Under the pieces are notes generated by a model. The model was not told the DNA's origin, did no database searches, and saw nothing but the letters and a program-made list of their open reading frames with translations. A stretch of 64,000 bases of DNA, taken from positions 186,001 through 250,000 of the IMG/VR virus record IMGVR_UViG_3300028840_008185; one strand, 5' to 3'. Below, piece by piece: positions 29,836 to 49,801 of the stretch (the first letter of the stretch is position 1; every line of letters starts with the position of its first letter). The position numbers and the translations under genes are program-made.

Positions 29836-30108
29836 TTACTGTTCTCCTTCATCAAATTTCCCAGCACTTAAGTCTTCCAATGTTTTGTCAAATTCTTCAT
29901 CCTCAAAAGATAAACTCCTTGGTTTTACTTTCCCCCAGGGAGTTTCGTTTGAGATTAATCTCGACCAGACTTCTTTATCCACCGCCGCGAGCGTGGCATG
30001 TGCGCCTCTAACATGAACACTATCAATGTTGGTCACATTAGAATAAAACACCAAATACTGTCTCGCGAGCAATAGTTCTGTAAGCGTAAGTTTTCCTAAA
30101 TCTTTCAT
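29836..30108 (-). CDS. hypothetical protein (90 aa)
   Basis: TAATG overlap. Confidence 0.75.
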   Translation of the reverse strand: MKDLGKLTLTELLLARQYLVFYSNVTNIDSVHVRGAHATLAAVDKEVWSRLISNETPWGKVKPRSLSFEDEEFDKTLEDLSAGKFDEGEQ

Positions 30109-30947
30109 TAATTTCCTCCATCTATATCTCTTACATCATTGGACGGCAGGAGCCCGGTCGCCTCATTCAGGAAAAGAATTTGCGCGTTTCCTGCAAGCGT
30201 GATCTCCGTGACTCCACCGTTATTACTACTATCATTGGTGCAAACCAAAATTATCGACTTTTCTTCGTTGAACGCAACGGCAACAACCTGGGGCGCCGTG
30301 CCACCGATCACCTCGTTCGTAGCGCCGCTGCCAACGATGCCGTAGTCAATGGCCAGTCCGTAGCCGTCCAAGCCATCACTATATCCATCTACAGTTTGCG
30401 AATCGTATGTTTCTATTCTCGTCATGCCCAGGCTGGTTCCCACGAAAAGCCTAGCACCTCCACTGAGCCGCAGCGAAGCGGCATCAATTACCTCAAGACT
30501 GAGAATCTGTCCTGGGAAAAGAGCGGGGGTGGAGGTAGTGTTGTATATAAAATCAGGAGCCCTAGTGGTGTCTCCCCTGAAGTGAGCACCATAATATACT
30601 TCAACTCGGTTCAATGTCTCGTTTATTACATACAAGATCCCTTTATCACTTAGCCCCGGCTTGTTGCAGCTATAGCCATCCGCATACTGTTCAACACTCG
30701 CCGTGTCGTTCTTAATTACCACAGCACCATGCGAAGGGCCACCATAATCATCAAAGGAAGCTGCCAAGAAATCATCGGAGCCCACGGCATTGCCGGATAT
30801 ATGAGAGACACTATCGGACGGAATGGGCGGAACAGTAGTCGTATCCAGTATGGTCGAGACCACACTTTGACTCTCACCGACCAGATCGGCTAAATCTATC
30901 TTTTTAATTCCATATCCGTCTGAAAAATATAGTGCATTAACTGCCAT
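30108..30947 (-). CDS. probable virion structural beta-rich protein, 4 DGY
   Basis: Composition and context; propeller-like C-terminus. Confidence 0.7.
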   Translation of the reverse strand: MAVNALYFSDGYGIKKIDLADLVGESQSVVSTILDTTTVPPIPSDSVSHISGNAVGSDDFLAASFDDYGGPSHGAVVIKNDTASVEQYADGYSCNKPGLSDKGILYVINETLNRVEVYYGAHFRGDTTRAPDFIYNTTSTPALFPGQILSLEVIDAASLRLSGGARLFVGTSLGMTRIETYDSQTVDGYSDGLDGYGLAIDYGIVGSGATNEVIGGTAPQVVAVAFNEEKSIILVCTNDSSNNGGVTEITLAGNAQILFLNEATGLLPSNDVRDIDGGN

Positions 30948-30961
30948 TTGGTTTGTGCTCC

Positions 30962-33283
30962 TTATCTGCGAATCTTTACTCTTCTTATCAGCATAGAATC
31001 AGAAGTGTCTGGGGTCACGGGTGCGCCAGGAGATCTTCCGATAGTAATTCTATCGACGGCTCTCGGCACCGTTTCAGCTGTCCCAGTGCTTCCAGCAACG
31101 TCATCAACAAAAATCGCGTAGTTGTTGTCTTGGTAGTCAAACCTTAGTTTGTGCTCATATCCGTCCACTATATCAGCAGTTCCCGCCACCGGAACAACCA
31201 ATGGATAAATTCTGTCGATTACCACTGCCTCTCCCTTATCACCGACGGGATCCACATATACCTGAATTCTTTGAAACTTATCTTGACCATTACTTATGCC
31301 CATAATAGTTCTGTCGTAGGCCACCAAATCGTGCTCTGGAATCATACCGTAAGCCTCAATTACACCGTAGCCATCGTATATGTTGTCTGTCGCAAAATAT
31401 GACAAATTGTCAACTGCCTTGACAACTCCACTGATGCCATTTTCCGGAGTAAAGTTAGACGGGTAGCAAGTATCAGATTCAACTTGCGCCATCGCCACAT
31501 CAGTGGTATACATATTGGTTCCAGTATATAAAACCACTCCGTCTTGAGTAGCGGAATAGATTCTTATTTTGTCTGGAAACCAAGGAATCGTTTCCTCAAA
31601 AGGACCAGCCTTCCAAGAAAACCAGCATCTATACCAACCTTCCTTCCAGTCTTCGATTCCAGCTTCTTTCACATTAACAGCAGTTCCCTTTACACCACTC
31701 CCAACGTTGAAGTAGCAAGAGCGATAAATGCGATTAAGGCTGCTAAGCACCTCTAAGCGTATCCAGGCTCTATCTACAGCCTTGGCAAATACGGAAGCCA
31801 CATAGTATTCGGAATCTCTGGCATCAACAGCAATGTCGCTCTGGACGAAATGGATCCCATATGCAGAATTTTCTCTTAGCCTGTCAGCAGTCAGCATGTT
31901 GTCTGGAGCGTAAGTTGCGTTAGGAGAAACCGACATTCGTATGTTTGTCCAAGCATCAAAATTTTCTGGGTTGACAACTTGATTATAAAACCTTCTTTCA
32001 ACCAATAGCCCGTCTTCAGTTGCAACCCCGGAGCCGTTGTATCTGCGGCAGGTTCTAAACCAGTCTTCTCCTACACGGTAGTATTTCCTATATCCAGTTG
32101 ACTCCACTTTATCAAGATAAGCTACAGACGCCCTGGTGTGTAATTCTGGCGTGTAAGTTCCCGCAATTACTGGGTGTGTCTTGGTAATTTCCCTAAACCT
32201 TTGACCCTCGGTTGCAATTATCTCACCAGCGTTGGCGTCAGTGAACCAAGATGTTCTATTCCACAGGCAGACCAAAGCGACTTCAAAGCTGCCACCAGAA
32301 TTCCCAATCGCAAAGCGCTGGGAATTCGTCAAAGACCCAAGCCCAATGATCTCTGTTACTGTGCTGAACTTACCATCAACGAAAGCGTAAGCGTTCCCTC
32401 CCCTATCAACGTAGAAGGATATGTAATACCAAGTGTTTGGCTTCAACTCTCCAGTATAAATCGTGGTTGATCCAAGTGTTCCATACAAAGTAAGCGCTGC
32501 TGTTTGTGGAAAACTAGTGAATCTCAGTATCCAGCCGCCATCAGCATTTCCTTTGGACGCAATATTCCCAGGAGTTAGATAATCTGGAGTCTTAATCATG
32601 GCACTTAAAACAAAATCTTCAGATGTCATATCGCCGGTTACATTTCCCAAAGAATCCCAGAAATATATGCCGTTATTGAAAAGAACACTTTTGTCCGTAG
32701 TGCCAAGCAACGGGGTGTTCCTACCAGCCGTTACATCGGGGACGCTGCCAGCAGCTTCTAACGGCGCACCCCACCCCATATATGAATCCCATGTTGAGGT
32801 TGTTGCAACATCACCATTATAACAAAGTTCTGGGCTCTCATCCAAGGAATTTATTGTTAAGGTCATCTCGGCGTTAAAGATGTTGGTGTCCATATACTCA
32901 ACTAAAAATGTGATTTCGCCAGTTGAAAAAGTCCAACTATCATCCAGGGTATTTCCACCATAGTCATCAGCGACTACCCTAACTGTTATTTCTTCGTTTC
33001 CGTAAGGAACTGTCTTATCTACTACAATATGATACCCATCGTAACCGTCTACGATGGTAGGGGTAATCGCAGAAGAGGGGCCATTGAAGGGCGCTACGAA
33101 ACTGCCATTATATGCATCGGCTCCATCCACCCAAACTCTAAGAGTAGAGAGATCCACAAAGGTCTCGGCGTCCAGAACATCAACAGATATGAGCACACTT
33201 GTAGAAACTCTCGACGCTCCTGGCGCAGGGAACTCATTTCTTAAAAATGGCGGATTACCCGTATCAAAAAACCAGCTAGGCAT
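30962..33283 (-). CDS. probable virion fibre/spike protein: Ig-like, LamG/ConA-like and carbohydrate-binding-like domains
   Basis: N-terminal Ig-like repeat; W.....YVD......FVDG LamG pattern; NQVVNPENF...APDNMLTADRL. Confidence 0.75.
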   Translation of the reverse strand: MPSWFFDTGNPPFLRNEFPAPGASRVSTSVLISVDVLDAETFVDLSTLRVWVDGADAYNGSFVAPFNGPSSAITPTIVDGYDGYHIVVDKTVPYGNEEITVRVVADDYGGNTLDDSWTFSTGEITFLVEYMDTNIFNAEMTLTINSLDESPELCYNGDVATTSTWDSYMGWGAPLEAAGSVPDVTAGRNTPLLGTTDKSVLFNNGIYFWDSLGNVTGDMTSEDFVLSAMIKTPDYLTPGNIASKGNADGGWILRFTSFPQTAALTLYGTLGSTTIYTGELKPNTWYYISFYVDRGGNAYAFVDGKFSTVTEIIGLGSLTNSQRFAIGNSGGSFEVALVCLWNRTSWFTDANAGEIIATEGQRFREITKTHPVIAGTYTPELHTRASVAYLDKVESTGYRKYYRVGEDWFRTCRRYNGSGVATEDGLLVERRFYNQVVNPENFDAWTNIRMSVSPNATYAPDNMLTADRLRENSAYGIHFVQSDIAVDARDSEYYVASVFAKAVDRAWIRLEVLSSLNRIYRSCYFNVGSGVKGTAVNVKEAGIEDWKEGWYRCWFSWKAGPFEETIPWFPDKIRIYSATQDGVVLYTGTNMYTTDVAMAQVESDTCYPSNFTPENGISGVVKAVDNLSYFATDNIYDGYGVIEAYGMIPEHDLVAYDRTIMGISNGQDKFQRIQVYVDPVGDKGEAVVIDRIYPLVVPVAGTADIVDGYEHKLRFDYQDNNYAIFVDDVAGSTGTAETVPRAVDRITIGRSPGAPVTPDTSDSMLIRRVKIRR

Positions 33284-33299
33284 TTATAATTTTGCTCCG

Positions 33300-34073
33300 T
33301 TAGAGATTTTTCTCCCAACCTTTCTCGTCGTATCCAGCCTCCACAACCAGATCTGCAAAATCTGGGTCAGATTTTATAAGGCCCAATATTCGTGTTTTGT
33401 GATATTTCCACTGACCAACAGAATCTCTGTCAACTGGTCTTGGCCCCTTCAGCCAACGCATGGATCGATGACGCAGCTCTTTTTCAGTAAGAGTGTTGGG
33501 CCAATCATTGACATCTTCCATCCCCTTTTCTAAACCAATAGTCTCAAAAAGATTTTCCATAACCTCATTTGGTTGGGACACTAGCTCCTCATACTTTACT
33601 AGCAAGGTTCTATCGGGGTGTATTTCATAAAGTCTTTTGTAAATCGCTTCAGCATTTTTCCACATATACGGCAGACCCACATATCTGTTTGATTTTTGCA
33701 TCCTCGATGTCATGGAATCTCTGGGATCGCGGCGGATATGAATATGCCAAATTCTTTGCCAATTAGCCATCCACTCTACCCAAGGAATTATTTCTTCGCG
33801 ACCTTCAAAAATTGATTCACCAGACAGCACTCTCTCAGAGTTGATAAGGGCGGCATCAATTCCACTCATAGAGGCGCCCCATATATGAGGGGCGCCACAC
33901 CGCTTGCCAACAAAGGAAAGCTTGGGATCATCGTAGTATTGTTCTACGCGAAATAAAATAGGTGGTGGTATTTCCCCCATTATCACTTTAGTATCCTTGG
34001 CACAACGAAACAAGTTTTGTAACAAAGTTGTACCCGACCTGTTACAACCGAGAATAAAAATAAGTTCTCCCAT
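33300..34073 (-). CDS. PAPS-dependent sulfotransferase (Sulfotransfer_3/TPST-like)
   Basis: FILGCNRSGTTLL 5'-PSB loop; RRDPRDSMTS 3'-PB; VKYEELVSQP; PVDRDSVGQW; AAGGAG SD before ATG 34073. Confidence 0.88.
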   Translation of the reverse strand: MGELIFILGCNRSGTTLLQNLFRCAKDTKVIMGEIPPPILFRVEQYYDDPKLSFVGKRCGAPHIWGASMSGIDAALINSERVLSGESIFEGREEIIPWVEWMANWQRIWHIHIRRDPRDSMTSRMQKSNRYVGLPYMWKNAEAIYKRLYEIHPDRTLLVKYEELVSQPNEVMENLFETIGLEKGMEDVNDWPNTLTEKELRHRSMRWLKGPRPVDRDSVGQWKYHKTRILGLIKSDPDFADLVVEAGYDEKGWEKNL

Positions 34074-34084
34074 ACTTTTTCTCC

Positions 34085-35119
34085 TTATCGGGCAGTTATA
34101 TGAGTGCCCCACCCCAAACTGCTGGGCGGTGCTACTCCTAAATTTGTCCACGTTATAGTTTCTGCAGAAGAATTAACAACTCCTTCCCAAGTGTCCGCTC
34201 TCGGAATTGGGTGGAAAGGATCTCCATGCAGCCCTCCCACTATATATATTTTATTATTATCATCATCAACAACACAGTCCACGTATCCTCGCTGAGAAGG
34301 TGGACTATTTATATTGGTAAGTGTCCTGCGCGAATAGGATCCGGGGCTGGTTTCTACAATGGCATAAGTATCATTTAAAAATGTATAGGGTGAGATGTCA
34401 CCACCATATTCGCCCCAACCTGTTCTTCCTTCTACCTCAATGCCACCGAAATATATAAAAGCCCGCGAGCCTTCCCAATTAATCGTATTCGTCGCACAGG
34501 CATACTCCCAACTCTTGTCGGACCAAACATATGTTGTACTCCAGTCAGATGGATCAACCAGACATGCTATCATCATTGGCATGCCACCCCATCTAAAAAA
34601 AACCCAAAGTTTATCTCTAGAAGAATCCCATTCTAAATCTGGCCAATATCCTGATATAGGATATCCAAACCAAGTTCCTGGCGAGTGCGAACTCCATTGC
34701 CCAGATACACCATCCCACGTATAGATGGTGGCATCCTTCCAGAGTGCCATGGTTATCAAAATCATTTGATTATTAGTAGAGTCAAATGTCATAGCTGCCC
34801 AATGGCCTGGATATGTAGAATCTCCAGACCAGGAAGGCTGACTAGGTGCGTGCGTTACATTTGACCAAGTGTTGGTGTCCAAATCTAATTCCCATGTGCC
34901 CAATTCGTCGTAAAAACCACCATTCACATAAACTATTACATTTCTATTGGAATCATACGCAGCAACGCCATATGGATCAGAAAGCAGGTTTGGCCCTGCC
35001 ACTCCGGTTTCAATAGTATATAAATTAGTGCCAGAACTAAATTTAAACCAATCTTGATTTGGACTTTCTTCACCCTCATTTGTCCACTCAAGTGTGTACT
35101 CAGAACCATAGATCGTCAT
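34085..35119 (-). CDS. Kelch-like beta-propeller protein
   Basis: Repeated AYDS...VNGG, FDS, YFGG, IVGG...DTW blades. Confidence 0.75.
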   Translation of the reverse strand: MTIYGSEYTLEWTNEGEESPNQDWFKFSSGTNLYTIETGVAGPNLLSDPYGVAAYDSNRNVIVYVNGGFYDELGTWELDLDTNTWSNVTHAPSQPSWSGDSTYPGHWAAMTFDSTNNQMILITMALWKDATIYTWDGVSGQWSSHSPGTWFGYPISGYWPDLEWDSSRDKLWVFFRWGGMPMMIACLVDPSDWSTTYVWSDKSWEYACATNTINWEGSRAFIYFGGIEVEGRTGWGEYGGDISPYTFLNDTYAIVETSPGSYSRRTLTNINSPPSQRGYVDCVVDDDNNKIYIVGGLHGDPFHPIPRADTWEGVVNSSAETITWTNLGVAPPSSLGWGTHITAR

Positions 35120-35133
35120 ATAAAACTCCTATA

Positions 35134-37133: not shown

Positions 37134-38546
37134 TTACTGATATGTTCCAAACAAACCAATACATATTCTTGGATTAGAAATTCCAATATTTCTATTTAAC
37201 CACGCGGTATCAGGGGGCCTATTAGACTGAACACATGTGCTTATGTCTCCAGAATCAGAACCAGCAAACCAAAGCTGCCTTGCAGTAAGATAGTTTGGCT
37301 CACCAAATAGAGTATAAATTTGATCTATACCACCAGAAATGGTTATATTCGTCCAACTAGAACCATCATAACGACTTACAATATTGCCGTTTGGTGATCC
37401 AATCCATACGTCATTAAAATTTTCTTCGCCAGTAATGCTTGTATACGAAGCCTGTGGCGATGATAATGTGGTTCCTAAATTGACAGGTGGCGCCCCGTAT
37501 CGCCATACTTGTGCCACGCCTCCAACAGTAGTACCAGTGGCAATCCATTCATATGGAGCCGCCCAAATGGCATGTCCATCTCCTCCATCATCAAAGCCGT
37601 AAACAGTCCATTGCCCAAACCCTGGCGTAAAAGTCTGGGACCAGACTCCAACAATTCCGCCGCCAGAATCAGAACCAGCAACACAAACATTATATCCGTC
37701 ACGATCCCAATTTATAGCCACCGAACTTAACTTGGTTATAGGAGTTCCATTTCTTGGCACCCCTCGCTGGTCTCCAGCCGGTATCCCCGCATTAAGATTT
37801 GCAGATATATCTGACCAACTAGCACCATAGTCTGGCGAAAACATAGAACAACACGTTCCAGCAAAAGTATGGCCAACTGCAGCTACGTATTGACCATAAG
37901 CATAGACAGAAAGAAACCTGGTGCCAGCAGGTACTCCACCAGCCCCAGGAACAATCACCTGTGTCCAATTAGTTCCATTCCACTTGTATACCCCCTTCTC
38001 TTGAGCAGCAGCAAACATATAATTTGAATTGTTTCCGTGTAAACGCCTAAAACCTTGACCGGCACGACTCTCAGCTATGCCAGCGGCAAGTGTTGAATGT
38101 AAACTCCAAGTAGCTCCATCATTAGATGATTCATAAATTTGAATATTGCTTCCAGTTTGTATTGTGTATGCATACAATTTAAAAGTGCCTGGGAATCCTC
38201 CAATACCTTCAAAGAGGAATGGCTCTGATGGAACTATATCTTCATTTATTATCCTGAACCTAATCTCTGTATCGCGGGGTCTATCTACAGTGCCGGCAGG
38301 AGGAAATAGATTATAAATAATATCTTGGTAGCCTTCTAACAAATCAACATCGACAGTGACTCTACCCAAATCAAGCTCTCCAGCTTTCCTGATAACAAAA
38401 TTATATCCATCATAACTATCAGCATTGCTGTAAATAACAAAGGATCCATTATTATAGGGAGACTGAAAAGTGTATCCGTCCCAAGCCTGATTGTAGCCAG
38501 TGCCATAACCCTCCTCAATATCCACGGTCGCAAAACGTGTAACCAT
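37134..38546 (-). CDS. beta-propeller protein paralogous to N-half of 35134..37119
   Basis: Shared DGATW, RR.HG, PG.GG.P..TRF, PP.T.W.NRN blocks. Confidence 0.8.
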   Translation of the reverse strand: MVTRFATVDIEEGYGTGYNQAWDGYTFQSPYNNGSFVIYSNADSYDGYNFVIRKAGELDLGRVTVDVDLLEGYQDIIYNLFPPAGTVDRPRDTEIRFRIINEDIVPSEPFLFEGIGGFPGTFKLYAYTIQTGSNIQIYESSNDGATWSLHSTLAAGIAESRAGQGFRRLHGNNSNYMFAAAQEKGVYKWNGTNWTQVIVPGAGGVPAGTRFLSVYAYGQYVAAVGHTFAGTCCSMFSPDYGASWSDISANLNAGIPAGDQRGVPRNGTPITKLSSVAINWDRDGYNVCVAGSDSGGGIVGVWSQTFTPGFGQWTVYGFDDGGDGHAIWAAPYEWIATGTTVGGVAQVWRYGAPPVNLGTTLSSPQASYTSITGEENFNDVWIGSPNGNIVSRYDGSSWTNITISGGIDQIYTLFGEPNYLTARQLWFAGSDSGDISTCVQSNRPPDTAWLNRNIGISNPRICIGLFGTYQ

Positions 38547-39905: not shown

Positions 39906-39908
39906 TGA

Positions 39909-42900: not shown

Positions 42901-44816
42901 GTGTTGTCTTTCACAAAACCACCACTCCAGGTCCCGCGCCAGATGTCCCCATTACCATCGATCAGAAAGGCTTCGCCATCAAACTCGATGATGTTATACA
43001 TGGATACGCTGGTAGGTAAATCCCCGCCAGAATAAACTTCAAAGCCTCCGCCAGTGGTCCAACGCCGAAGCCGTACTGCTCCTGCTCCGGTATTCCATGT
43101 AACAGCGAACAAGCACTCATCAGCACTAATAGCTAGTGGCCAGTCTCGCCCGCCGCGATTAGTCTGTCCCTGTAGAACATCAAACGTAGCACCATTCCAT
43201 CTATAAATATAAGTGTTGGGAGAGCCAATGGCATCTCCACACATGAATACATAGTCTGCCCCTGGAACCTTCGAAATGGCGCAATAGCCCCGATTATTCG
43301 AAGGTGTGGCGTCATAGGTTGTCCATGAATACCCATCCCAGTGGATCATAGAGAACCGGTCGCTGCCCGAGTTGGTCAGCATACCGATCCAAATGTCATC
43401 CATGCTGCTGTTGCGATAATCGAAATTGTGTACCCCGCCAAACGTAAAGCCGGGCGGTACAACAGGGAAGCGTCCTAGACCGCTACCTTCTTCCCAGTGC
43501 CAAAGCTCGTTGTTGGCTGCGGGAGTGAGGTAGCCTATAAAGTGGGCTCCGTCAGAAACTGGAGTGGAAGTGAACGAGCAATACCCGTCTACAAAATTTC
43601 CAGATAAATCCTCAGCATATACTCCCACCGTGAGATACGCATCTGGCCAAGTGCTATCAGCAGGAGGAAGCATCACATATCTGTAGCCATCCCAGTTCCC
43701 ACTACTTATAGCCGTTCTTGAGCCACGATAGCCATCAGTAGGTGCATCATTCTGCCAAATTACATATCCATCCAATGCAACGATGGTGGCAGATCCATCA
43801 ATGTTGCCATATTCATCAAGAACATCAAAAGCTATGCGAACTGTGTCAGGCTGTGTGCTACCATCGGCTGGATATTCTCTAAGTATCTGTGGTGCGTAAG
43901 CATCCGCCGACGTGTCAAAGCTCCACGATCCGTCAAGATGGAGCCCATCAAAATCATCAACTGTAATTCTTGGCGTTATTGTGCTTCCCCACGGAAGCAC
44001 TGTTGTTCTGTCTAAAACAATGTGATATCCGTCGTAGCCATCAACAGTAGTTGGGGTTATGGATGACAGAGGGCCGTCATACGGGGAAACAAATCCCAAG
44101 CCAACCCTGTAAGCATCGGCGCCGCTAACATAAGCATCAAGAGTAGAGAGATCGATGCCAGAGTATTCGTCTATAACATCGACCGAGATGAGCGTTCCTA
44201 TATCAACATTGGAAGCACCTGACGCAGGGAATCTGTTTCTGAGTTCTGGTACAAAATAATCTATAACGCGAAAGCTGTAAGTTGTATCTAGCGCATCAAC
44301 ATAACCATCATGAGCAACAACCCTTACGGAAATAGTGGTAAAGTAATCCCAGTCTGAGGTCTTCTGGATTGCGAAATGATGACCTAGGTCAACAAGCGTG
44401 CGGGAAGAACTCCCACCATTATAGGGTGCAGCAAATGTATCTGTCGATCCCTGATATGCCAAGACTCCTTCAACCTCAATAGACACCGTAGCTAAGTCTA
44501 TATTGTTGTTTATGTCCAGCAAATCAAATTCGACAACCTTATCAATCGCAACACCTGTGGCGTTTGGAAGGGGATCTTGATTGTCTAGATAAGGCGCGGT
44601 GCGATCAAGCCACCAGCCGAAAACCTCATCACGCGCTTCAGTTCTTGGGTCGGAGTAGCCATCAAAACCGAACAAAACTGTACTACCACCCGCCCAATCT
44701 CCCGGTTGATAATTCCGGGGATCGGCATAGCCATCAAAGCCAGATTGTACAGTATTGCCACTAGCCCAGCCGCCTGGGCTAAAGTTTCGAGGGCTGGCAT
44801 ATCCGTCCCAAACCAT
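39909..44816 (-). CDS. 1635-aa fibre/adhesin-like protein: 3 N-terminal DGY repeats, 5 Ig-like domains, central propellers
   Basis: Repeats read directly; at least 14 DGY; ends in DGY-stop. Confidence 0.8.
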   Translation of the reverse strand: MVWDGYASPRNFSPGGWASGNTVQSGFDGYADPRNYQPGDWAGGSTVLFGFDGYSDPRTEARDEVFGWWLDRTAPYLDNQDPLPNATGVAIDKVVEFDLLDINNNIDLATVSIEVEGVLAYQGSTDTFAAPYNGGSSSRTLVDLGHHFAIQKTSDWDYFTTISVRVVAHDGYVDALDTTYSFRVIDYFVPELRNRFPASGASNVDIGTLISVDVIDEYSGIDLSTLDAYVSGADAYRVGLGFVSPYDGPLSSITPTTVDGYDGYHIVLDRTTVLPWGSTITPRITVDDFDGLHLDGSWSFDTSADAYAPQILREYPADGSTQPDTVRIAFDVLDEYGNIDGSATIVALDGYVIWQNDAPTDGYRGSRTAISSGNWDGYRYVMLPPADSTWPDAYLTVGVYAEDLSGNFVDGYCSFTSTPVSDGAHFIGYLTPAANNELWHWEEGSGLGRFPVVPPGFTFGGVHNFDYRNSSMDDIWIGMLTNSGSDRFSMIHWDGYSWTTYDATPSNNRGYCAISKVPGADYVFMCGDAIGSPNTYIYRWNGATFDVLQGQTNRGGRDWPLAISADECLFAVTWNTGAGAVRLRRWTTGGGFEVYSGGDLPTSVSMYNIIEFDGEAFLIDGNGDIWRGTWSGGFVKDNTTDGPFSVATVGDTRPCFAVSADDSFLCYAVGQDFWIRNGPDSWTNLGPTGVAGTTAQPAAVDSQTLWASGSNTSRISIDGGSTWNNLVSGGYAAQGFIAPISDPNRRIVTTYGTKVADYTLWTKGDSKYAAWCRWADNSSRGQDKADPDDLTVLATNYSDIQGFSSGEVVLSISSGGTGGSPADIAWHYDPTSDSWTAHKLSNPARIERLYGTDYVAERIHGVGEDGTNIYYFRWNGSAWTASLIPGSTGGYELNISASRDGQDIWITSSNSQLWHSDDGGTSWVNRFAAAAALHGSSKQLVISLSVVGTDKLYTLDGSLNLVEFSPQINTGTYDAVAGIWGDANSRLIMGARQAAGTTQKFLHLEGGVWVDKGPCNFTGGNKADRIHGYDYNNVYALSWNSDPVLKQWNGSTWVTDATLAPVGNLLFDVYVYGPNIEDVVVGGNQYIGFRDNSPRGAGVWTNQWAQLVADVAPTVVTGSYVGAIHAISANEIYVWLYYATSVSGGRLCKWDGVSWSYIGPFEWPYAGPARSSATAANKQWYSSGYGGAAGAQFFDGATVTRQDAVPFNLFGGDIWMFNDEVGYVAYSESGTFEFIVRRTADGASWSEIVRDSSWTGGSQNVYLGALTGPANLAKDVITTNEGAWVALQGLGGTMLFSKFEGGSWSVAAPDISEAAGDRSLFRDGSGDWWVFTADDLASDASVYELVTGSWSLQQKLGDTLTPTGISAFNDSAVMAVSAESNNRLWDDIAASGLGWLEGITGTNWLPTTQTWVGISKIGDADVTSPVLSNQNPAPDQTGVIIETNISLDITDDDSGLDAYSVILAIDGHTAWEMEMAQPGFSVGTFAIADGYRYVINPDADFSTYSYVVVEVDAYDFAGNYLDAYYSFLTIDTDPPEIANEFPPDGASGVNPNTLLSVDIFSKGIGVDFSTINAYVDGQLAYNGSFIAPFNGVSSDITPTVVDGYDAYNLIIDKTAPYHSGDSVTTRIDALNKDGY

Positions 44817-44829
44817 TTATTGCTCCTCC

Positions 44830-46047
44830 TTATAGTGGCAGGAATTGTGGAGTCACACCTGGCCATGGGATGACAAATCCATCATAAATGTGGAGTTTGT
44901 CTTTCGTACCGACATCATCTATGGTCTGCATATTGTTGAAATTCCTGCGTACCATTTCGAACGGGGCATATTCCCCCATGATCTCATATTTGTCCACCGC
45001 GTTGAATGGATCAATCACAAGTGTTATGCCAGGCTTTAAATCATTTTTACCCGTGCGTGCATTTGCCTCGTTAGATGTCCAATATGTAAAACCATTCCCA
45101 AAATCATTATACGACCATTCCAGAGCATAACAGACATTCACAGAAGAATCAGCTTCTCTCCAGACAAATCCGTTATATTTACTCTGGACAATATTGCGTT
45201 CAAATCCTTGGGCATTCCATGCTTGAGCCTGGTCTGTTCCACCAAGAACCCACAACTCATCATCCGTATGTGCCGGTTCCGTTTCAAAAGGGATCATCTT
45301 TGCCATCGTGAGGCCATTTACTCCCGCCGTACTGCTTGTTGAGTTCAGGTAGATGCACAACTTACTACCATCGTCTGTTCCGTAGGCGTAGTAATATAGC
45401 TCGCTCACTAAGCCTTGGTTAGTTTGACCAAAATGTTTGTGTCTCCAAGTTCCAGATGATAATTCGAGAATCTTATTGCCAACAGCAAAGGTGTCCAGCG
45501 CAACTATACACCGCAAATAATAGTTGCCGATGATGATGAACTTGATCTCCCAGCTGTCAGCATGCGGTGTGCGCAGTTGCCACTCATCGTTGACCGTATT
45601 GGGCGTGTTATTATCTTCCGCCATCATGTAATAACTCATATCATCGCCAGTATTCTGTACTGGATATTCGGCAGCGCCAGATCTATAATCGATAGAAACA
45701 CGATCCGCATCAACATAACCATCAATTGCATACCAACCACTATTCTCTCCATTATTGGGGTCTACAAGGAGAATCCATTTCCCCACATCCCCAGCAGTAA
45801 ACGGACTGTTGGTGTCGTCACGGAAATACCCATCAGTTCCAGAAACATTGATACTGCCAACTCCAGTGGCATAAGTGACACCAGTATAGTCAGTTGGATC
45901 GTAACTGCCGCCGCCGCCAAGACTCTCAGAAAAATTTGTGTATCCAAGAACGTGATACATCCACCAACACAACATCTTAGAGTAGAAACTGATGCCTGCA
46001 CGCGTAGCTGACGAAAACCTTATTTCTCTAAGCCAGTGATTTGCCAT
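44830..46047 (-). CDS. structural protein, paralog B2 (MANHWLREI...)
   Basis: Long near-identical blocks shared with 47353..48576. Confidence 0.85.
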   Translation of the reverse strand: MANHWLREIRFSSATRAGISFYSKMLCWWMYHVLGYTNFSESLGGGGSYDPTDYTGVTYATGVGSINVSGTDGYFRDDTNSPFTAGDVGKWILLVDPNNGENSGWYAIDGYVDADRVSIDYRSGAAEYPVQNTGDDMSYYMMAEDNNTPNTVNDEWQLRTPHADSWEIKFIIIGNYYLRCIVALDTFAVGNKILELSSGTWRHKHFGQTNQGLVSELYYYAYGTDDGSKLCIYLNSTSSTAGVNGLTMAKMIPFETEPAHTDDELWVLGGTDQAQAWNAQGFERNIVQSKYNGFVWREADSSVNVCYALEWSYNDFGNGFTYWTSNEANARTGKNDLKPGITLVIDPFNAVDKYEIMGEYAPFEMVRRNFNNMQTIDDVGTKDKLHIYDGFVIPWPGVTPQFLPL

Positions 46048-46059
46048 TATTAGCCTCCT

Positions 46060-47268
46060 TTAACGATTCCACTGGACGTGGACTCTGCTTCCATTCCATG
46101 GCATAGATATACCACCTTGCAAGTGGAGGAAAAAATCTGGAGTTGTTCCGAACGGAGTAAGATTATCATAACGCCCGCCATTCCATAAAGACTTTGGAAC
46201 GCCCCGAGCCTCCATATGTCCTGCTGCCCGACTCTGTAACATGATCTCTATCCTATAGATGCCGCCAGACCATTGCGACCACATGTTATTTGCGTCAAAA
46301 ATGCTGGTATTGTTTCCCGTACGTATAGACGGAACCAGCAAGTAGGCAGTCACTTCCACGTCGTTTGCTCCGGAATTGTATGCCATCATTCTTCCACCAT
46401 CATCAATGTTGGAAAATGCGGCACCATATCCAAGAGCTTCCCAAGCACCATCATTCTGGCCAGCTATTATAACGCCAGGGTTTGTATCTATTGCAGTTCC
46501 CGCCGTCGTCTCTATCGCCCCGATATAGTACAAAAGAAATTCATTATTGGTCCCAGAATCGTCAAACACACCAACAACGAAGTGGTCATTATCCGTTTCA
46601 TCACCATAAGCAAAAATATACCTATTCGTGGAATTAGCAGTTGATGTAGTCTTATTAGTTGTGTTCCTGGAATCTTCCCAGGCATTAGCAACCCCGTCCC
46701 AAGTGCCGAAGGGTCCAATAGCAACATAGGGGTTCCTCTGATCGCCGCCACCTTCAGTTATTAGGACATCCATATTCGGTTCAGCAGGCGCGTGTAGGTA
46801 TTGCGAGCGGATGACAGCCCAAGTGCTATTAGCTGGTACATCAGTATCATCCCAAATGCGAAAACTTACGCTGCCTTTATTAAGAGGTAGGCCATCTTCA
46901 TGAACACCCCGTTTGATATCAAGATAGGCATACTCGGTCACAGCATCCACATAGGTAATTTTGTACATACCGATGGTCTCCTTTTCAGAAGCAGACCAGC
47001 CAGCATTGCCCAGCATCGTCACGATACTCCCAGTATCTGCCGCCGTCAAAGTATAAGCTGACCCAGAGAAATCAAGAATTGCTGGGTTGCTGGCATGTGT
47101 GGCAGCATCCGCTCCAGATCCCTGCACACTTGTCCACCCAGCATCGTTATTATCATAGCCATCCCATCCAAGAATTTGAGTGGCAAACTCAAACATCCAT
47201 CTGGAAAAATTTTTGCCTGATTTAGAATCACTAGGGCCAAAGTGTAAGCCATTTTGGAAACGTGCCAT
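46060..47268 (-). CDS. structural protein, paralog A2 (MARFQNGLHFGP...)
   Basis: Long near-identical blocks shared with 48590..49801. Confidence 0.85.
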   Translation of the reverse strand: MARFQNGLHFGPSDSKSGKNFSRWMFEFATQILGWDGYDNNDAGWTSVQGSGADAATHASNPAILDFSGSAYTLTAADTGSIVTMLGNAGWSASEKETIGMYKITYVDAVTEYAYLDIKRGVHEDGLPLNKGSVSFRIWDDTDVPANSTWAVIRSQYLHAPAEPNMDVLITEGGGDQRNPYVAIGPFGTWDGVANAWEDSRNTTNKTTSTANSTNRYIFAYGDETDNDHFVVGVFDDSGTNNEFLLYYIGAIETTAGTAIDTNPGVIIAGQNDGAWEALGYGAAFSNIDDGGRMMAYNSGANDVEVTAYLLVPSIRTGNNTSIFDANNMWSQWSGGIYRIEIMLQSRAAGHMEARGVPKSLWNGGRYDNLTPFGTTPDFFLHLQGGISMPWNGSRVHVQWNR

Positions 47269-47304
47269 CAGTTTTGCTCCTTTGGGGACAAATAGTCGGT
47301 CATA

Positions 47305-47349
47305 TCAATCCCCAGGTTGATAATTCCGTGAATCGGCATCCCAAGCCAT
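47305..47349 (-). pseudogene. 14-codon relic of the 5' end of the 1635-aa gene (MAWDADSRNYQPGD*)
   Basis: Matches MVWDGY...DPRNYQPGDW of 39909..44816; same TAAATG start context. Confidence 0.75.
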
Positions 47350-47352
47350 TTA

Positions 47353-48576
47353 TTATGGGGCTGGCGAGAACTGTGGAGTTATGCCTGGCCATGGGATAAC
47401 AAACCCATCATAGATTTGGAGTTTGTCTTTCGTGCCGCCATCGTTTATGGTCGTCATTTTGTTGAAATTTCTGCGTGCCATTTCACACGGGGCATATTCC
47501 CCCATAATCTCATATTTGTGCGCATCGTTGAATGGATCAATCACGAATGTCATGCCAGGTTTTAAATCATTTTTACCAGTACGTGCATTTGGCTCGCCAA
47601 TGCCACCCACCCACGTAAAACCAAGATCATAAGTCGAGTGTGACCACTCCAGGGCATGACAGAAGTTCACAGAAGAATCAGCTTCTCTCCAAACATACCC
47701 GTTCAAATAGCTGTTGCCACTAGCGCCATACCAGCGTTGAAATCCCTCGTGAGAGTCGTCGCCAACGGTTTCCTGTCCAAAAAGAACCCACAGCTCATCA
47801 TCTGTGTGTGCTGGCACCGTTTCAAAAGGCAGCACCTTTGCCATCATGAGACCACTATTCCCTCCACTATCTGTTGTAAACATGTGGATACACAATTTTC
47901 TTCCATCGTCCGTTCCATAGGCGTAGTAATACAGCTCCGATGAAACGGATTGGGAGTTTTGACCAAAATGTTTATACGCTGGAGTTGACATTTGGAGAAT
48001 CTTGTTACCAACAGCAAAGGTATCCAGCGCAACCAAACATCGCAAATAATAGTTGGCTTGGAGAATAAACTTGATTTCCCAAGCATCAGCATGTGGTGTG
48101 CGAAGCTGCCATTCATCGTTAAGTGTGTCAGGCATATTATTATCTACCGCCATCATGTAATAGCTCATGTCATCGTTAGTATTCTGTATTGGGTATTCGC
48201 CGGGAGCAGATTTGTAATCGATAGAAACACGATCCGCATCGACATAACCATCAACTTCATACCAACCACTATTCTCTCCATTGGTGGGATCTACAAGAAG
48301 AATCCACTTCCCTACATCCCCAGCAGTAAATGGGCTGTTGGTATCGTCGCGGAAATATCCGTCAGTGCCAGAAACATTGATACTTCCAACACTAGTGGCA
48401 TAAGTAACCCCAGTATAATCAGTTGGATCATAGCTTCCAGCACCGCCAAGGCTCTCAGCAAAATTCGTATATCCAAGAACATGGTACATCCACCAACACA
48501 ACATCTTGGAGTAGAAACTAATGCCTCCACGCGCAGCTGCCGTAAGCTGTATTTCTCGAAGCCAGTGATTTGCCAC
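47353..48576 (-). CDS. structural protein, paralog B1 (GTG start, ANHWLREI...)
   Basis: AAGGAGG SD before GTG 48576; paralog alignment. Confidence 0.85.
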   Translation of the reverse strand: MANHWLREIQLTAAARGGISFYSKMLCWWMYHVLGYTNFAESLGGAGSYDPTDYTGVTYATSVGSINVSGTDGYFRDDTNSPFTAGDVGKWILLVDPTNGENSGWYEVDGYVDADRVSIDYKSAPGEYPIQNTNDDMSYYMMAVDNNMPDTLNDEWQLRTPHADAWEIKFILQANYYLRCLVALDTFAVGNKILQMSTPAYKHFGQNSQSVSSELYYYAYGTDDGRKLCIHMFTTDSGGNSGLMMAKVLPFETVPAHTDDELWVLFGQETVGDDSHEGFQRWYGASGNSYLNGYVWREADSSVNFCHALEWSHSTYDLGFTWVGGIGEPNARTGKNDLKPGMTFVIDPFNDAHKYEIMGEYAPCEMARRNFNKMTTINDGGTKDKLQIYDGFVIPWPGITPQFSPAP

Positions 48577-48589
48577 TACCAACCTCCTT

Positions 48590-49801
48590 TTAGGGAGAGC
48601 GATTCCACTGAACGTGAACTTCGCTTCCGTTCCATGGCATGGATAGACCGCCATTCAAATGGAGAAAAAAATCTGGAGTTGTTCCAAACGGAATAAGATT
48701 TGAATAAAGCCCACCACCCATCCACAAAGATTTTAGAACACCCCGAGCCTCCATGTGCCCTGCTGTCTGACTCTGTAACATAATCTCTATCCTATATCTG
48801 CTGCCAGACCATGACGACCACATCAGATTGTTGTCAAAAATACTGTTAGCGTCTCTGGGACACACAGATGGAACTATTAAATAGGTCGGGGCTATTTCCA
48901 CATCGTTCCCTCCGCCATTGTACGCCATCATTCTTCCGCCAATATCAATGTCGGAATCGTTGCCATTTCCAAGAGCAGGCTCATCGTCAGAGTTACTACC
49001 AGCCACTATAACACCGGGGTTGGTGTCTGTTAAAGTTCCCGCCGTTGGATCTATCGCCCCGATATAGTACAACACCAGTCTATTCATGGTTCTATCATAC
49101 ACGCCAACAACAAAATGATCGTTGTCCGTTTCATCACCATAAGCAAAAATATATCTGTCCGTGGAACCACTCGTATACGGAGTGCGGTTGGTTGTATTCC
49201 TAGAGTCAGCCCAACTATTACCAACCCCATCCCAAGTACCAAAGGGTCCAATCGCAACAAAGGGGTTATCATCATCTCCGTTGCCTTCAGTTATTAAAAC
49301 ATCCATATTCGGTTCAGCGGGTGCATGTAAATATTGCGAACGAATAACACCCCAGGTGCCGGTGGCTGGTGTATCAGTATCGTCCCAAATGCGCCAGCCT
49401 ACGCTACTTTTACCGAGAGGCAAACCATCTTCATGAACACCTCGTTTAATATCAAGATAAGCATACTCGGTCGCAGCATCCACATAAATGATTTTGTACA
49501 TGCCGATGGTTTCTTTTTCAGAATCAGACCAGCCGGCGTTGCCTAGCATTGTTACAATGCTCCCAACATTTGCTGCCGTCAAAGTATAGGCCGATCCAGA
49601 AAAATCGAGAATTGACGGATCGCTGACGTGTGTAGCAGCATCCACTCCAGATCCCTGCACACTCGTCCACCCAACATCATTATCATCATAGCCATCCCAC
49701 CCAAGAATTTGGGTGGCAAACTCAAACATCCATCTTGAGAGTTGTTTGCCTGATTTAGCGTAACTGGGGCCGAAGTGTAAACCATTTTGGAAACGTGCCA
49801 T
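48590..49801 (-). CDS. structural protein, paralog A1
   Basis: Paralog alignment with 46060..47268. Confidence 0.85.
   Translation of the reverse strand: MARFQNGLHFGPSYAKSGKQLSRWMFEFATQILGWDGYDDNDVGWTSVQGSGVDAATHVSDPSILDFSGSAYTLTAANVGSIVTMLGNAGWSDSEKETIGMYKIIYVDAATEYAYLDIKRGVHEDGLPLGKSSVGWRIWDDTDTPATGTWGVIRSQYLHAPAEPNMDVLITEGNGDDDNPFVAIGPFGTWDGVGNSWADSRNTTNRTPYTSGSTDRYIFAYGDETDNDHFVVGVYDRTMNRLVLYYIGAIDPTAGTLTDTNPGVIVAGSNSDDEPALGNGNDSDIDIGGRMMAYNGGGNDVEIAPTYLIVPSVCPRDANSIFDNNLMWSSWSGSRYRIEIMLQSQTAGHMEARGVLKSLWMGGGLYSNLIPFGTTPDFFLHLNGGLSMPWNGSEVHVQWNRSP

What the first reader, a model, noticed from the sequence alone, without database searches (positions are those of the whole stretch)
30108..49801. 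Tripeptide DGY is about ten-fold enriched across the structural cluster
Seen (hand count about 35): 4 in 30108..30947, 4 in 30962..33283, 1 in 35134..37119, 3 in 37134..38546, 3 in 38607..39905, at least 14 in 39909..44816 (which starts WDGY and ends DGY-stop), and 6 in the duplicated quartet. About 3 would be expected from rough residue frequencies. Some copies sit in the repeated Ig-like domain (TVDGYDGYH), but many are in unrelated contexts. Inference: a recognition site for post-translational modification, cleavage or assembly.
Basis: partly seen in the sequence, partly recalled or inferred. Interest (0 to 1): 0.68.

Follow-up and report, generated by a model that had tools for sequence, protein, structure and literature searches.

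The report
D-G/A-Y motif on phage fibres
The outer tail and fibre proteins of an uncultured giant phage lineage carry the three-residue motif Asp-Gly/Ala-Tyr about 13 times more often than chance, most likely as a tag for sugar or sulfate attachment by the phage's own enzymes, though this is not proven.

Summary
The count is exact: 35 DGY in twelve minus-strand ORFs (30108..49801) against 2.8 expected. No shuffle exceeded 11. The motif acts at protein level: 77 in-frame codon matches against 1 in each other frame or strand. It is order-specific and really D-[G/A]-Y (DGY 12.8x, DAY 4.9x; NGY, EGY, DGF, DGW and YGD about 1x).

The enrichment survives collapsing paralogs (44 clusters against about 6 expected). 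A second cluster, the tail/baseplate module, has 42 against 3.1. The rest of the 318-kb phage genome has 6 against 9.5.

Four related giant-phage genomes (GC 30-56%) share the trait. Homologous Ig-like domains in other lineages lack it, so it is a lineage-specific overlay rather than a property of a fold. Sites lie in turns, loops, linkers and outward-facing strand positions. Some sites are conserved; many are recent gains.

The genome encodes a sulfotransferase closest in fold to tyrosylprotein sulfotransferases, placed inside the cluster, plus an APS kinase and a roughly 14-kb glycosylation island beside the tail module. The glycosyltransferase core is present in all four genomes. The sulfation genes are not.

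Best reading (about 0.4): a Tyr-directed modification sequon, most likely glycosylation, with sulfation as an accessory. No modification has been observed.

The parts
30108..30947 (-). 279-aa beta-propeller virion protein with 4 DGY (residues 10, 90, 187, 194)
   Evidence: Count. AF2 model with a 34-sequence alignment has pLDDT 90.8, with DGY in inter-strand turns and loops. Best PDB matches are WD40-like and sensor beta-propellers. In 34 orthologues, 150 of the 200 D[GA]Y lie in conserved columns and 50 are sporadic, spread over 27 columns.
30962..33283 (-). 773-aa tail protein: N-terminal Ig-like (Big_5-like) domain, Laminin_G_3-like domain and a tail-protein C-terminal part; 4 DGY + 1 DAY, including VDGYDGYH
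   Evidence: (phrog_5939 tail protein, 1.3e-19). The domain has 499 relatives among 1.84 billion representative proteins.
33300..34073 (-). 257-aa sulfotransferase (Sulfotransfer_3), closest in fold to tyrosylprotein sulfotransferases; 0 DGY. The ORF listing extends it to a GTG at 34151.
   Evidence: Pfam PF13469, 1.1e-15. Database gene call of 257 aa. Best PDB sequence hits are TPST2/TPST1, weak at E 0.01, with a matching RSGTTL PAPS loop. AF2 model pLDDT 80.6; the top 13 Foldseek PDB hits are all TPSTs.
34085..35119 (-). 344-aa Kelch-like beta-propeller; 0 DGY. It precedes the sulfotransferase in every relative that has it.
   Evidence: Weak Kelch family hits. Conserved neighbourhood in L005, L010, L012 and L014.
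35134..37119 (-). 661-aa protein of unknown family, 1 DGY
37134..38546 (-). 470-aa protein of unknown family, 3 DGY
38607..39905 (-). 432-aa protein with Ig-like domains, 3 DGY + 2 DAY. Its first residues (MGTIGTWTFGV) are the missing last strand of the upstream protein's final Ig-like domain.
39909..44816 (-). 1635-aa fibre-like protein with 14 DGY + 8 DAY. It has three 24-residue N-terminal DGY repeats, several Ig-like domains and a central BNR/propeller-like region, and it ends in DGY-stop.
39903..39911 (-). In-frame junction: TAA stop, one codon (TCA), then the ATG of the next ORF. This splits an Ig-like domain between two ORFs.
   Evidence: The same arrangement (TAG, TTA, ATG) occurs in the divergent relative L024.
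44830..47268 (-). First copy of a duplicated gene pair (405 aa with 2 DGY; 402 aa with 1 DGY)
   Evidence: The paralogs are 74% and 77% identical to the second copy.
47353..49801 (-). Second copy of the duplicated gene pair (433 aa with 2 DGY; 403 aa with 1 DGY)

Best explanation
The hydrophobic-Asp-(Gly/Ala)-Tyr motif is a selected short linear motif. It is displayed on turns, loops, linkers and outward-facing strand positions of the peripheral virion proteins (fibres, baseplate periphery) of one lineage of uncultured giant phages from sediment and seawater.

Inferred mechanism: it works as an acceptor sequon. A phage-encoded enzyme recognises Asp at -2 and a small residue at -1, and modifies the phenolic OH of the Tyr. 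The most likely modification is O-glycosylation by the conserved glycosyltransferase island that lies directly beside the tail module. That island holds a double GT4 of about 750 aa, GT2s, a CgeB-like GT, GDP-mannose 4,6-dehydratase, epimerases and methyltransferases.

In this particular phage a sulfation branch is added: an APS kinase that makes PAPS, a TPST-like sulfotransferase inside the DGY-rich cluster, and a second sulfotransferase in the island. It may sulfate the glycan or some of the Tyr directly.

Shown: the motif, its specificity, its distribution, its evolutionary gain, and the presence of the enzymes. Inferred: that any of these enzymes acts on the motif, and that Tyr is the modified residue.
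For: Specificity:
- DGY 77 observed against 6.0 expected (12.8x) and DAY 23 against 4.7 (4.9x) in the two structural clusters.
- NGY 0.7x, EGY 0.9x, DGF 1.6x, DGW 0.4x. All permutations are 0.5-2.3x.
- The requirement for Tyr rather than Phe points to the hydroxyl.

Protein-level signal: GAYGGNTAY occurs 77 times in frame against 1 in each other frame or strand, and all D, G and Y codons are used. The trait persists in genomes of 30%, 32%, 46% and 56% GC.

Compartment specificity: clusters A and B have 35 against 2.9 and 42 against 3.1. The other roughly 74,000 residues of the genome have 6 against 9.5. In the clusters 11.9% of Tyr lie in D[GA]Y, against 0.7% elsewhere.

Not a property of a fold:
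- Among 150 proteins sharing the Ig-like domain, 85 are rich. In these DGY is 26x inside the domain and 11.5x outside it.
- 52 are poor (0.5x and 0.8x) and keep only one ancestral NG[YF] hairpin.
- The motif also sits in a beta-propeller, in disordered N-terminal repeats and in tandem DGYDGYDGY linkers.

Ongoing gain: in 34 orthologues, 50 sporadic D[GA]Y lie in 27 columns that are otherwise S/G/N/T-rich, against 9.6 expected in total. Control motifs are at expectation.

Enzymes:
- The glycosylation island lies next to the tail module.
- Its core (GT4x2, two GT2s, Gmd, the 690-aa GT) is orthologous in all four genomes, and GT4x2 again sits next to D[GA]Y-rich proteins in a fifth record.
- APS kinase, E 4e-63.
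- TPST-like sulfotransferase.
Against: - No modification has been observed, and no reads, proteome or structure bear on it.
- The glycosyltransferase island and the motif co-occur only within one clade, so shared descent alone could explain the association. I found no independent lineage to test it.
- The island could serve another purpose, such as host polysaccharide or DNA modification.
- The most conserved sites are tight beta-turns (propeller blades, the Ig F-G hairpin), where a purely structural role is plausible and an enzyme would need access to a folded turn.
- No Tyr-glycosylating transferase of this kind is known. GT4x2 resembles generic GT4 enzymes only.
- The complex prediction of the sulfotransferase with a DGY-repeat peptide gave no verdict.
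Confidence: 0.4

Rival explanations
1. Unmodified structural or binding motif. An Asp-capped tight turn followed by an exposed Tyr serves as a generic contact hot spot, for host polysaccharide or receptor or for packing between fibre subunits. This lineage has multiplied it without any covalent modification.
For: - Conserved sites are inter-strand turns in the propeller model.
- In the Ig-like domain the second DGY of VDGYDGYH replaces an ancestral [ND]G[YF] hairpin.
- The residue at -1 is hydrophobic in 74% of sites, as at a strand end.
- Ig-like and propeller domains on fibres are typical binding modules.
Against: - A turn role does not explain the strictness: NGY 0.7x, DGF 1.6x, DGT/DGS 1.5-1.7x, and NG is not avoided (0.94x).
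- DAY lies within a beta-strand, not a turn.
- Tandem DGY linkers and disordered N-terminal repeats are not turns.
- Homologous domains in other lineages do without it.
Confidence: 0.3
2. Direct tyrosine O-sulfation. The TPST-like sulfotransferase encoded inside the cluster sulfates the Tyr of D[GA]Y on its neighbours, using PAPS from the phage APS kinase.
For: - The sulfotransferase lies among the DGY-rich genes.
- Best sequence and fold matches are TPST1, TPST2 and tick TPST.
- APS kinase is in the genome.
- Sulfotransferase homologues of 40-66% identity sit next to D[GA]Y-rich proteins in L010-L013.
- Known TPST and RaxST sites have an acidic residue just before Tyr (general knowledge).
Against: - Relatives with the same enrichment have the whole PhoH-to-M24 syntenic cluster in view with no sulfotransferase: L024, L103, L104, L105.
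- Three 300-340 kb records have no orthologue of it. One has a marginal hit of 14 bits. Two lack an APS kinase.
- One sulfotransferase-positive contig has no rich neighbour (L014).
- Similarity to TPST is modest (TM 0.6, 15% identity).
- No verdict from the complex prediction.
Confidence: 0.15
3. Tyr-based cross-linking or oxidation (dityrosine or DOPA-type hardening or adhesion of fibres), with Asp-small-Tyr as the reactive unit, by analogy with the D-S/T-Y-G units of resilin.
For: - Strict need for Tyr.
- Tyr content rises from 3.7% to 6.1% in rich proteins.
- Tyr/Gly-rich linkers.
- An FAD oxidoreductase is conserved a few kb downstream.
Against: No peroxidase or tyrosinase was identified. 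Nothing links the oxidoreductase to these proteins. The analogy is from memory only.
Confidence: 0.05
4. Protease cleavage site: virion maturation cuts after DGY.
For: The 1635-aa protein starts MVWDGY and ends in DGY. Four cluster representatives also end in LN[KM]DGY.
Against: - The C-terminal DGY is explained by a conserved in-frame stop that splits an Ig-like domain.
- Many sites lie in the core turns of well-folded domains, where cleavage would destroy the fold.
- No protease is associated.
Confidence: 0.03
5. Artefact of paralogy, composition or a DNA-level signal.
For: Some sites are in repeated Ig-like domains, a duplicated gene quartet and 24-residue N-terminal repeats.
Against: - 44 independent clusters remain, against about 6 expected.
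- Shuffles never exceed 11.
- The signal is frame-specific: 77 against 1.
- It is present across 30-56% GC.
Confidence: 0.01

Closest known systems
Short bacterial glycosylation sequons with an upstream acidic residue: Campylobacter PglB D/E-X-N-X-S/T, and the Bacteroidetes O-glycosylation motif D-(S/T)-(A/I/L/V/M/T) (PMC8550257)
   Same: A three- to five-residue linear motif with an Asp or Glu one or two positions before the acceptor hydroxyl or amide. It occurs many times on surface proteins, is gained and lost in exposed regions, and acts together with a glycan-synthesis gene island.
   Different: The putative acceptor here is Tyr, the middle residue must be Gly or Ala, no oligosaccharyltransferase was found, the proteins are phage virion proteins made in the cytoplasm, and no glycan has been detected.
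Tyrosine O-glycosylation of Gram-positive S-layer proteins, e.g. Paenibacillus alvei SpaA (reviewed in PMC2943079)
   Same: It shows that Tyr can be the attachment residue for a surface-protein glycan in prokaryotes.
   Different: To my knowledge there are few sites per protein and no D-[GA]-Y consensus. That system is lipid-linked and extracytoplasmic, and it is not viral.
Tyrosylprotein sulfotransferases (human TPST1/2, tick TPST; Xanthomonas RaxST acting on RaxX)
   Same: The cluster's sulfotransferase is in Pfam Sulfotransfer_3, has the RSGTTL PAPS-binding loop and the RDPRD 3'-phosphate motif, and its model matches TPST structures best. Known sites have an acidic residue next to Tyr.
   Different: Only about 15% identity and TM 0.6. 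Known sites are D/E-Y rather than D-[GA]-Y. The enzyme is absent from most relatives that carry the motif. No activity has been shown.
Virion glycosylation by virus-encoded glycosyltransferases (mycobacteriophage capsid and tail proteins, see PMC11256854 for the inference from two GT genes; chlorovirus major capsid protein, from general knowledge)
   Same: The virus carries its own glycosyltransferases and sugar-nucleotide enzymes next to structural genes, and decorates exposed virion proteins.
   Different: Those systems use Ser/Thr-rich tails or atypical Asn sequons. No order-specific Tyr motif, no sulfation branch and no giant tailed phage case is described, as far as I know.
Generic [ND]-G type I' beta-hairpin turns and the conserved Asp of the WD40 b-c turn
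   Same: The conserved DGY sites of the propeller and of the Ig F-G hairpin occupy exactly such turns. Non-rich homologues have NG[YF] there.
   Different: Generic turns accept N, and T/S/K/F after Gly. Here only D and only Y are enriched, Ala can replace Gly, and many sites are not turns.

Membership tests
Tyrosylprotein sulfotransferase (for ORF 33300..34073) | Sulfotransferase fold with a 5'-phosphosulfate-binding loop and a 3'-phosphate-binding motif | tested here: met
   PF13469, 1.1e-15. GCNRSGTTL aligns with TPST GVPRSGTTL. RDPRD is invariant in 7 homologues.
Tyrosylprotein sulfotransferase (for ORF 33300..34073) | Closer in structure to TPSTs than to carbohydrate or small-molecule sulfotransferases | tested here: met
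   Foldseek PDB ranks 1-13 are all TPST1, TPST2 or tick TPST (E 1e-7 to 6e-6, TM 0.56-0.60). CurM and OLS come next at about 2e-5, and heparan 3-OST at 3e-5. The margin is modest.
Tyrosylprotein sulfotransferase (for ORF 33300..34073) | Catalytic Glu and peptide-binding groove equivalent to TPST2 E99/R78/K158/S285 | tested here: inconclusive
   An invariant G33-E34 lies about where TPST2 has G-E-E. HMMER instead aligns D27, which is D or N in homologues, to E99. No coordinates were available to decide.
Tyrosylprotein sulfotransferase (for ORF 33300..34073) | Transfers sulfate from PAPS to peptidyl-Tyr | not testable with these tools
   Needs an enzyme assay. The complex prediction gave no verdict.
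Protein glycosylation sequon (for D-[GA]-Y) | Short, order-specific motif over-represented on exposed parts of surface proteins only | tested here: met
Protein glycosylation sequon (for D-[GA]-Y) | A cognate glycosyltransferase system is present wherever the motif is enriched | tested here: inconclusive
   The GT4x2/GT2/Gmd core is present in all four genomes and in a fifth record. All belong to one clade and no independent contrast was obtained.
Protein glycosylation sequon (for D-[GA]-Y) | Glycan covalently attached at the motif | not testable with these tools
   Needs mass spectrometry or structure.
Big_5 / bacterial Ig-like domain (for the repeated domain holding VDGYDGYH) | Match to the family profile | tested here: inconclusive
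   PF13205, E 1.6e-5 (26.0 bits, above the 23.6 cut-off) in the 1635-aa protein. E 0.0018 (19.4 bits, below the cut-off) in the 432-aa protein. The domain has its own large family of 499 representatives.
Lys-Asp isopeptide domains (SpyTag-like V-D-A-Y) | Conserved partner Lys and catalytic Glu in the same domain | tested here: not met
   The domain has at most one Lys, and it is not conserved in the 30-sequence alignment. The only invariant residues are two Pro.
Tyrosine corner of Greek-key beta-sandwiches | Tyr near a strand end with the consensus L-x-P-G-x-Y or D-x-[GA]-x-Y, i.e. spaced 4-5 residues from the partner | tested here: not met
   The spacing here is D-[GA]-Y with no intervening residue, and the motif also occurs in propellers and linkers. 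The hydrogen bonds themselves could not be examined.

The most novel reading that the evidence does not exclude
D-[G/A]-Y is the acceptor code of a phage-encoded tyrosine modification system. The virus's own enzymes would glycosylate the tail fibres and baseplate periphery of a whole lineage of giant phages, and in some members sulfate them, at dozens of Tyr per protein. That would be the first sequon-defined virion modification code in a tailed phage and the first viral use of Tyr as the attachment residue.
Probability: 0.3. Interest if true: 0.85.

Novelty: new variant of a known kind. Interest (0 to 1): 0.7.

Why it matters
If the motif is a modification sequon, it gives a sequence-readable marker for modified virion proteins in uncultured giant phages. 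It also names the enzymes to test and adds tyrosine to the residues that viruses use for surface decoration. That bears on host recognition, on resistance of virions to proteases, and on how phage fibres interact with polysaccharide-rich sediments.

Even if it proves to be an unmodified contact motif, the case is unusual and easy to study. It is a 13-fold, order-specific tripeptide enrichment maintained across genomes of 30-56% GC and absent from homologous domains elsewhere. That makes it a clean example of selection for a short linear motif in viral structural proteins.

Tried and rejected
- Paralogy, composition and DNA-signal explanations: rejected.
- Generic beta-turn or avoidance of deamidation-prone N-G: rejected as sufficient. 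NG is at 0.94x, and NGY, DGF and DGT are near 1x.
- 'Paratope-like' D/G/Y composition: rejected. Permutations are 0.5-2.3x.
- SpyTag-like Lys-Asp isopeptide: rejected, as there is no conserved Lys.
- Cleavage site: the C-terminal DGY is explained by a split domain.
- Sulfotransferase as the universal partner: not supported by relatives.
- Complex prediction of the sulfotransferase with residues 1-70 of the 1635-aa protein: no verdict (score 0.00). This is not evidence either way.
- Literature: no paper on a DGY motif in phages or on phage tyrosine sulfation.
- No relatives in cultured phages by megablast or tblastn.
- Single-protein scans of viral contigs found nothing, and the sulfotransferase alignment scan also found nothing. 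The 30-sequence domain alignment was too divergent to scan with.
- Records behind ENA, Logan and JGI loci could not be searched whole.
- Distant (25% identity) homologues of the GT4x2 N-terminal part, in small viral contigs, have no D[GA]Y-rich neighbours. They are a different, single-domain protein, so this is uninformative.
- The metagenome scan with the M24 peptidase returned mostly cellular methionine aminopeptidases. Two of those contigs are labelled human-gut metagenome. They are microbial contigs, were only passed through the batch motif/HMM count, and were not used further.
- Alternative genetic codes were tried only as a check on the ORF-poor stretch 1..8000. Under tables 4 and 25, which read TGA as sense, the longest open frames grew to 314-460 aa, as removing a stop codon is expected to do. 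This was not followed up, and table 11 is used throughout.


Full report
**Observation.** Two ORFs in the middle of the cluster have none. Composition predicts 2.83. In 5000 within-protein shuffles the mean was 2.86 and no shuffle exceeded 11. DGY is the most over-represented of all tripeptides (Poisson p 4e-26); the next are WDG and DAY.

**The signal is in the protein, not the DNA.** The pattern GAYGGNTAY occurs 77 times in frame 0 of the sense strand of the structural genes. It occurs once in each of the other frames and strands in which it was found. All codons for D, G and Y are used.

**Where the window lies.**
- The window is bases 186001-250000 of a 318,373-bp IMG/VR virus record with 79% estimated completeness. 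The same phage is on a 452,599-bp JGI metagenome contig.
- It is a giant tailed phage. It has PhoH, ribonucleotide reductase, a DnaB-like helicase, a PrkA/YeaH/SpoVR trio about 37% identical to that of Thermus phage phiYS40, an endolysin, a tubulin-like gene and a UvsW-like helicase.
- It has no close cultured relative.
- The runs that hold it are sediment and seawater metagenomes.

I made a crude ORF set for the whole record.
- DGY occurs 83 times against 15.5 expected, and the excess is confined to two gene blocks.
- The reported cluster has 35 against 2.9.
- A second block, at genome positions 268018-318373, has 42 against 3.1. It holds Baseplate_J, tail sheath and tape-measure-like genes.
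- The remaining roughly 74,000 residues have 6 against 9.5.
- Within the two blocks the conserved core parts (sheath, Baseplate_J) have one site each. The rich proteins are the large, unannotated, presumably peripheral ones.

**Specificity.**
- In the two blocks DGY is 12.8-fold and DAY 4.9-fold enriched.
- NGY (0.7), EGY (0.9), DGF (1.6), DGW (0.4), DSY (1.2) and every permutation of D, G, Y or D, A, Y (0-2.3) are at background.
- NG is not avoided (0.94).
- 100 of 207 [GA]Y dipeptides are preceded by D. In the blocks 11.9% of all Tyr lie in the motif, against 0.7% elsewhere.
- The flanks carry little information, except that position -1 is hydrophobic in 74% of sites against 41% background.

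The motif is therefore hydrophobic-D-[G/A]-Y, read in one direction.

**Paralogy.** Some sites are inherited copies: the Ig-like domain with VDGYDGYH, three 24-residue N-terminal repeats of the 1635-aa protein, and the duplicated gene pair (74% and 77% identity). Single-linkage BLAST clustering of 83-residue windows still leaves 44 groups from 77 sites, against about 6 expected.

**A lineage-specific overlay, not a property of a fold.** The Ig-like domain (residues 1-125 of the 773-aa protein) has 499 relatives among 1.84 billion representative proteins. The best 150 are bimodal.
- 85 proteins are rich. DGY is 26-fold enriched inside the domain and 11.5-fold outside it. DAY is 13.8-fold and 4.5-fold. 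Tyr content is 6.1%.
- 52 proteins are poor. DGY is 0.5-fold and 0.8-fold. They keep only one NG[YF] hairpin per domain. Tyr content is 3.7%.
- In the alignment, rich members have a four-residue insertion (V-D-G-Y) in front of the ancestral hairpin.
- They also have D-A-Y where poor members have E-V-T, R-I-W or R-V-Y in the strand S-T-L-x-V-x-V. D and Y therefore occupy the two outward-facing positions and Ala the inward one.

**The motif also sits in unrelated structures.**
- The 279-aa protein models confidently (pLDDT 90.8) as a beta-propeller.
- Two of its four DGY are in tight inter-strand turns (residues 10-12 and 90-92). The other two (187 and 194) lie in a long loop between strands, one in coil and one in a short helical turn.
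- Elsewhere the motif forms tandem linkers, such as DGYDGYDGY in a 2288-aa protein and a Y/G/D-rich stretch in a 672-aa protein. It also forms apparently disordered N-terminal repeats.

**Evolution of sites.** In 34 orthologues of the 279-aa protein (37-73% identity) there are 200 D[GA]Y.
- 150 lie in nine columns that are conserved in 7-27 sequences.
- 50 lie in 27 sporadic columns where the other sequences have S/G/N/T-rich residues.
- Composition predicts 9.6 in total.
- Control motifs (N[GA]Y, D[GA]F, S[GA]Y, D[GA]T, D[GA]S) are at expectation.
- G and A interchange at homologous sites.

This is a conserved core plus continual gain, as seen for sequons and short linear motifs. The sequences are related, so the sporadic occurrences are not all independent events.

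**Clade-wide trait.**
- Three further IMG/VR records carry orthologues: 316, 340 and 302 kb, with GC of 32%, 56% and 30%.
- Their whole-record DGY counts are 63 against 14.0, 105 against 14.5, and 100 against 16.1. As here, the excess is concentrated in large proteins of two blocks.
- Contigs from other samples show the same pattern. Examples are 39 DGY in a 2400-aa protein, 20+7 in a 3047-aa protein, and 12+6, 10+7 and 8+2 in others.

**Candidate enzymes.**

(a) *Sulfotransferase inside the cluster.* ORF 33300..34073 is a Sulfotransfer_3 protein.
- Its best sequence matches in the PDB are TPST2 and TPST1. They are weak (E 0.01) but share the RSGTTL loop.
- A model built on seven homologues (pLDDT 80.6) has tyrosylprotein sulfotransferases as its 13 best Foldseek matches, ahead of CurM, SULT7A1 and heparan 3-O-sulfotransferases.
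- In relatives it is always preceded by a roughly 340-aa Kelch-like gene.

(b) *Further sulfation genes.* The genome encodes an APS kinase (E 4e-63) and a second sulfotransferase. It has no ATP sulfurylase above cut-off and no PAPS reductase.

(c) *Glycosylation island.* Directly upstream of the tail module, at genome 253483-267691, lies a glycosylation island. It holds:
- an epimerase;
- three GT2s;
- GDP-mannose 4,6-dehydratase (E 8e-109);
- a second epimerase/reductase;
- three methyltransferases;
- the second sulfotransferase;
- a radical-SAM/SPASM protein;
- a 690-aa Glyco_trans_1_2/DUF3880 protein, a domain pair I recall from the spore-crust protein CgeB;
- a 758-aa protein with two GT4 domains.

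**Which enzymes travel with the motif?**

*The sulfotransferase does not.*
- Four relatives have the whole syntenic stretch from PhoH to the M24 peptidase in view. Their proteins are D[GA]Y-rich and there is no sulfotransferase (L024, L103, L104, L105).
- The three large records have no orthologue of either sulfotransferase or of the Kelch-like gene. One has a marginal 14-bit hit.
- Only one of the three has an APS kinase.
- These records are incomplete, so absence is not proven. Several independent absences nonetheless make a universal role unlikely.

*The glycosyltransferase core does.*
- The double GT4 (E about 0), two GT2s, the dehydratase and the 690-aa transferase have clear orthologues in all four genomes.
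- They again lie next to the D[GA]Y-rich tail proteins, and in a fifth record too.

This is co-occurrence within one clade, so it may reflect shared descent only. I could not obtain an independent contrast.

**Interpretation.** The strict need for Tyr rather than Phe, for Asp rather than Asn or Glu, and for a small middle residue points to recognition of a short linear motif whose hydroxyl matters. So do the fixed order, the restriction to peripheral virion proteins, the spread over unrelated folds and linkers, the absence from homologous domains elsewhere and the continual gain.

The most economical mechanism is a modification sequon on Tyr. Because the glycosyltransferase island is the only candidate machinery shared by all motif-bearing genomes examined, O-glycosylation is my first choice (overall about 0.4 for a modification sequon, about 0.3 for Tyr glycosylation). 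The sulfation genes would then be a lineage-specific addition that acts on the glycan or on some Tyr.

An unmodified contact or turn motif remains a serious rival (0.3), chiefly because the most conserved sites are tight turns. Direct Tyr sulfation as the general explanation is less likely (0.15). Cross-linking (0.05) and cleavage (0.03) are minor, and artefact is excluded.

**Comparison with known systems.**
- The closest analogues in logic are the bacterial sequons with an upstream acidic residue: PglB, from general knowledge, and the Bacteroidetes D-(S/T)-hydrophobic motif (PMC8550257).
- Others are Tyr-linked S-layer glycans (PMC2943079) and virion glycosylation by virus-encoded transferases (PMC11256854 for the mycobacteriophage inference; chloroviruses from general knowledge).
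- None uses D-[GA]-Y, none is described for giant tailed phages, and none has a sulfation branch.
- I found no paper on this motif.

I therefore rate it a new variant of a known kind, if the modification reading is right.

**Limits.**
- No coordinates of models were available, so exposure is inferred from secondary structure and alignment periodicity.
- Gene calls for whole records are crude longest-ORF sets.
- No expression or proteome data exist.
- The complex prediction gave no verdict.

Noticed in passing
window 39903-39911 (junction of ORFs 39909..44816 and 38607..39905, minus strand); also L024:19142-19150: An Ig-like domain is split by an in-frame stop. The 1635-aa ORF ends ...ALNKDGY, then TAA, then one codon. 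The next ORF starts MGTIGTWTFGV, which is the missing last beta-strand of that domain.

A divergent relative has the same layout (…DKEGN, TAG, TTA, ATG, MAEITFSFTT). Other family members end in LN[KM]DGY or start with W-x-F-x-T strands, including the 773-aa ORF (MPSWFFDTG).

This suggests programmed read-through, or donor-strand complementation between consecutive fibre proteins.
   Followed up: partly
genome G000:C1:253483-267691 (outside the window; L001:3483-17691): A roughly 14-kb glycosylation island lies directly upstream of the tail module. It holds GDP-mannose 4,6-dehydratase, epimerases, three GT2s, a CgeB-like GT, a double GT4, three methyltransferases, a second sulfotransferase and a radical-SAM/SPASM protein. 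Its GT core is conserved in four related genomes.
   Followed up: partly
genome G000:C1:52292-52840 (outside the window): A phage-encoded APS kinase (PF01583, E 4e-63), with no ATP sulfurylase above cut-off and no PAPS reductase in the record. One of the three related records also has one.
   Followed up: partly
window 1-8000: An 8-kb stretch of 54-56% GC, against about 45% elsewhere. It has no open frame longer than 271 codons on either strand, and no Rfam match, tRNA, tandem repeat or notable repeat. Reading TGA as sense (tables 4 and 25) lengthens the frames to 314-460 codons, as removing a stop codon is expected to do, so this alone is not evidence of recoding. Unexplained.
   Followed up: partly
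window 44830-49801: Tandem duplication of a two-gene unit: 405/433 aa at 74% identity and 402/403 aa at 77%. The DGY sites are conserved between the copies, and the two genes of a unit are unrelated to each other.
   Followed up: yes
window 56096-60682; L001:1932-3386: A PrkA-like kinase, a DUF444/YeaH-like gene and a SpoVR-like gene lie together, as in Thermus phage phiYS40 and in huge uncultured phages. A tubulin/FtsZ-family gene and a UvsW-like helicase lie further on.
   Followed up: no
L005, L010, L023, L024, L103, L105 (relatives): Inteins and homing-endonuclease domains interrupt ribonucleotide reductase, PhoH, SpoVR and a 1323-aa Laminin_G protein in several relatives. They do not interrupt the corresponding genes of this window.
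   Followed up: no
window 15177-19691: A 1504-aa ORF whose middle part matches tRNA nucleotidyltransferase (phrog_2244, 1.5e-52), fused to regions of unknown function. No tRNA genes occur in the window.
   Followed up: no
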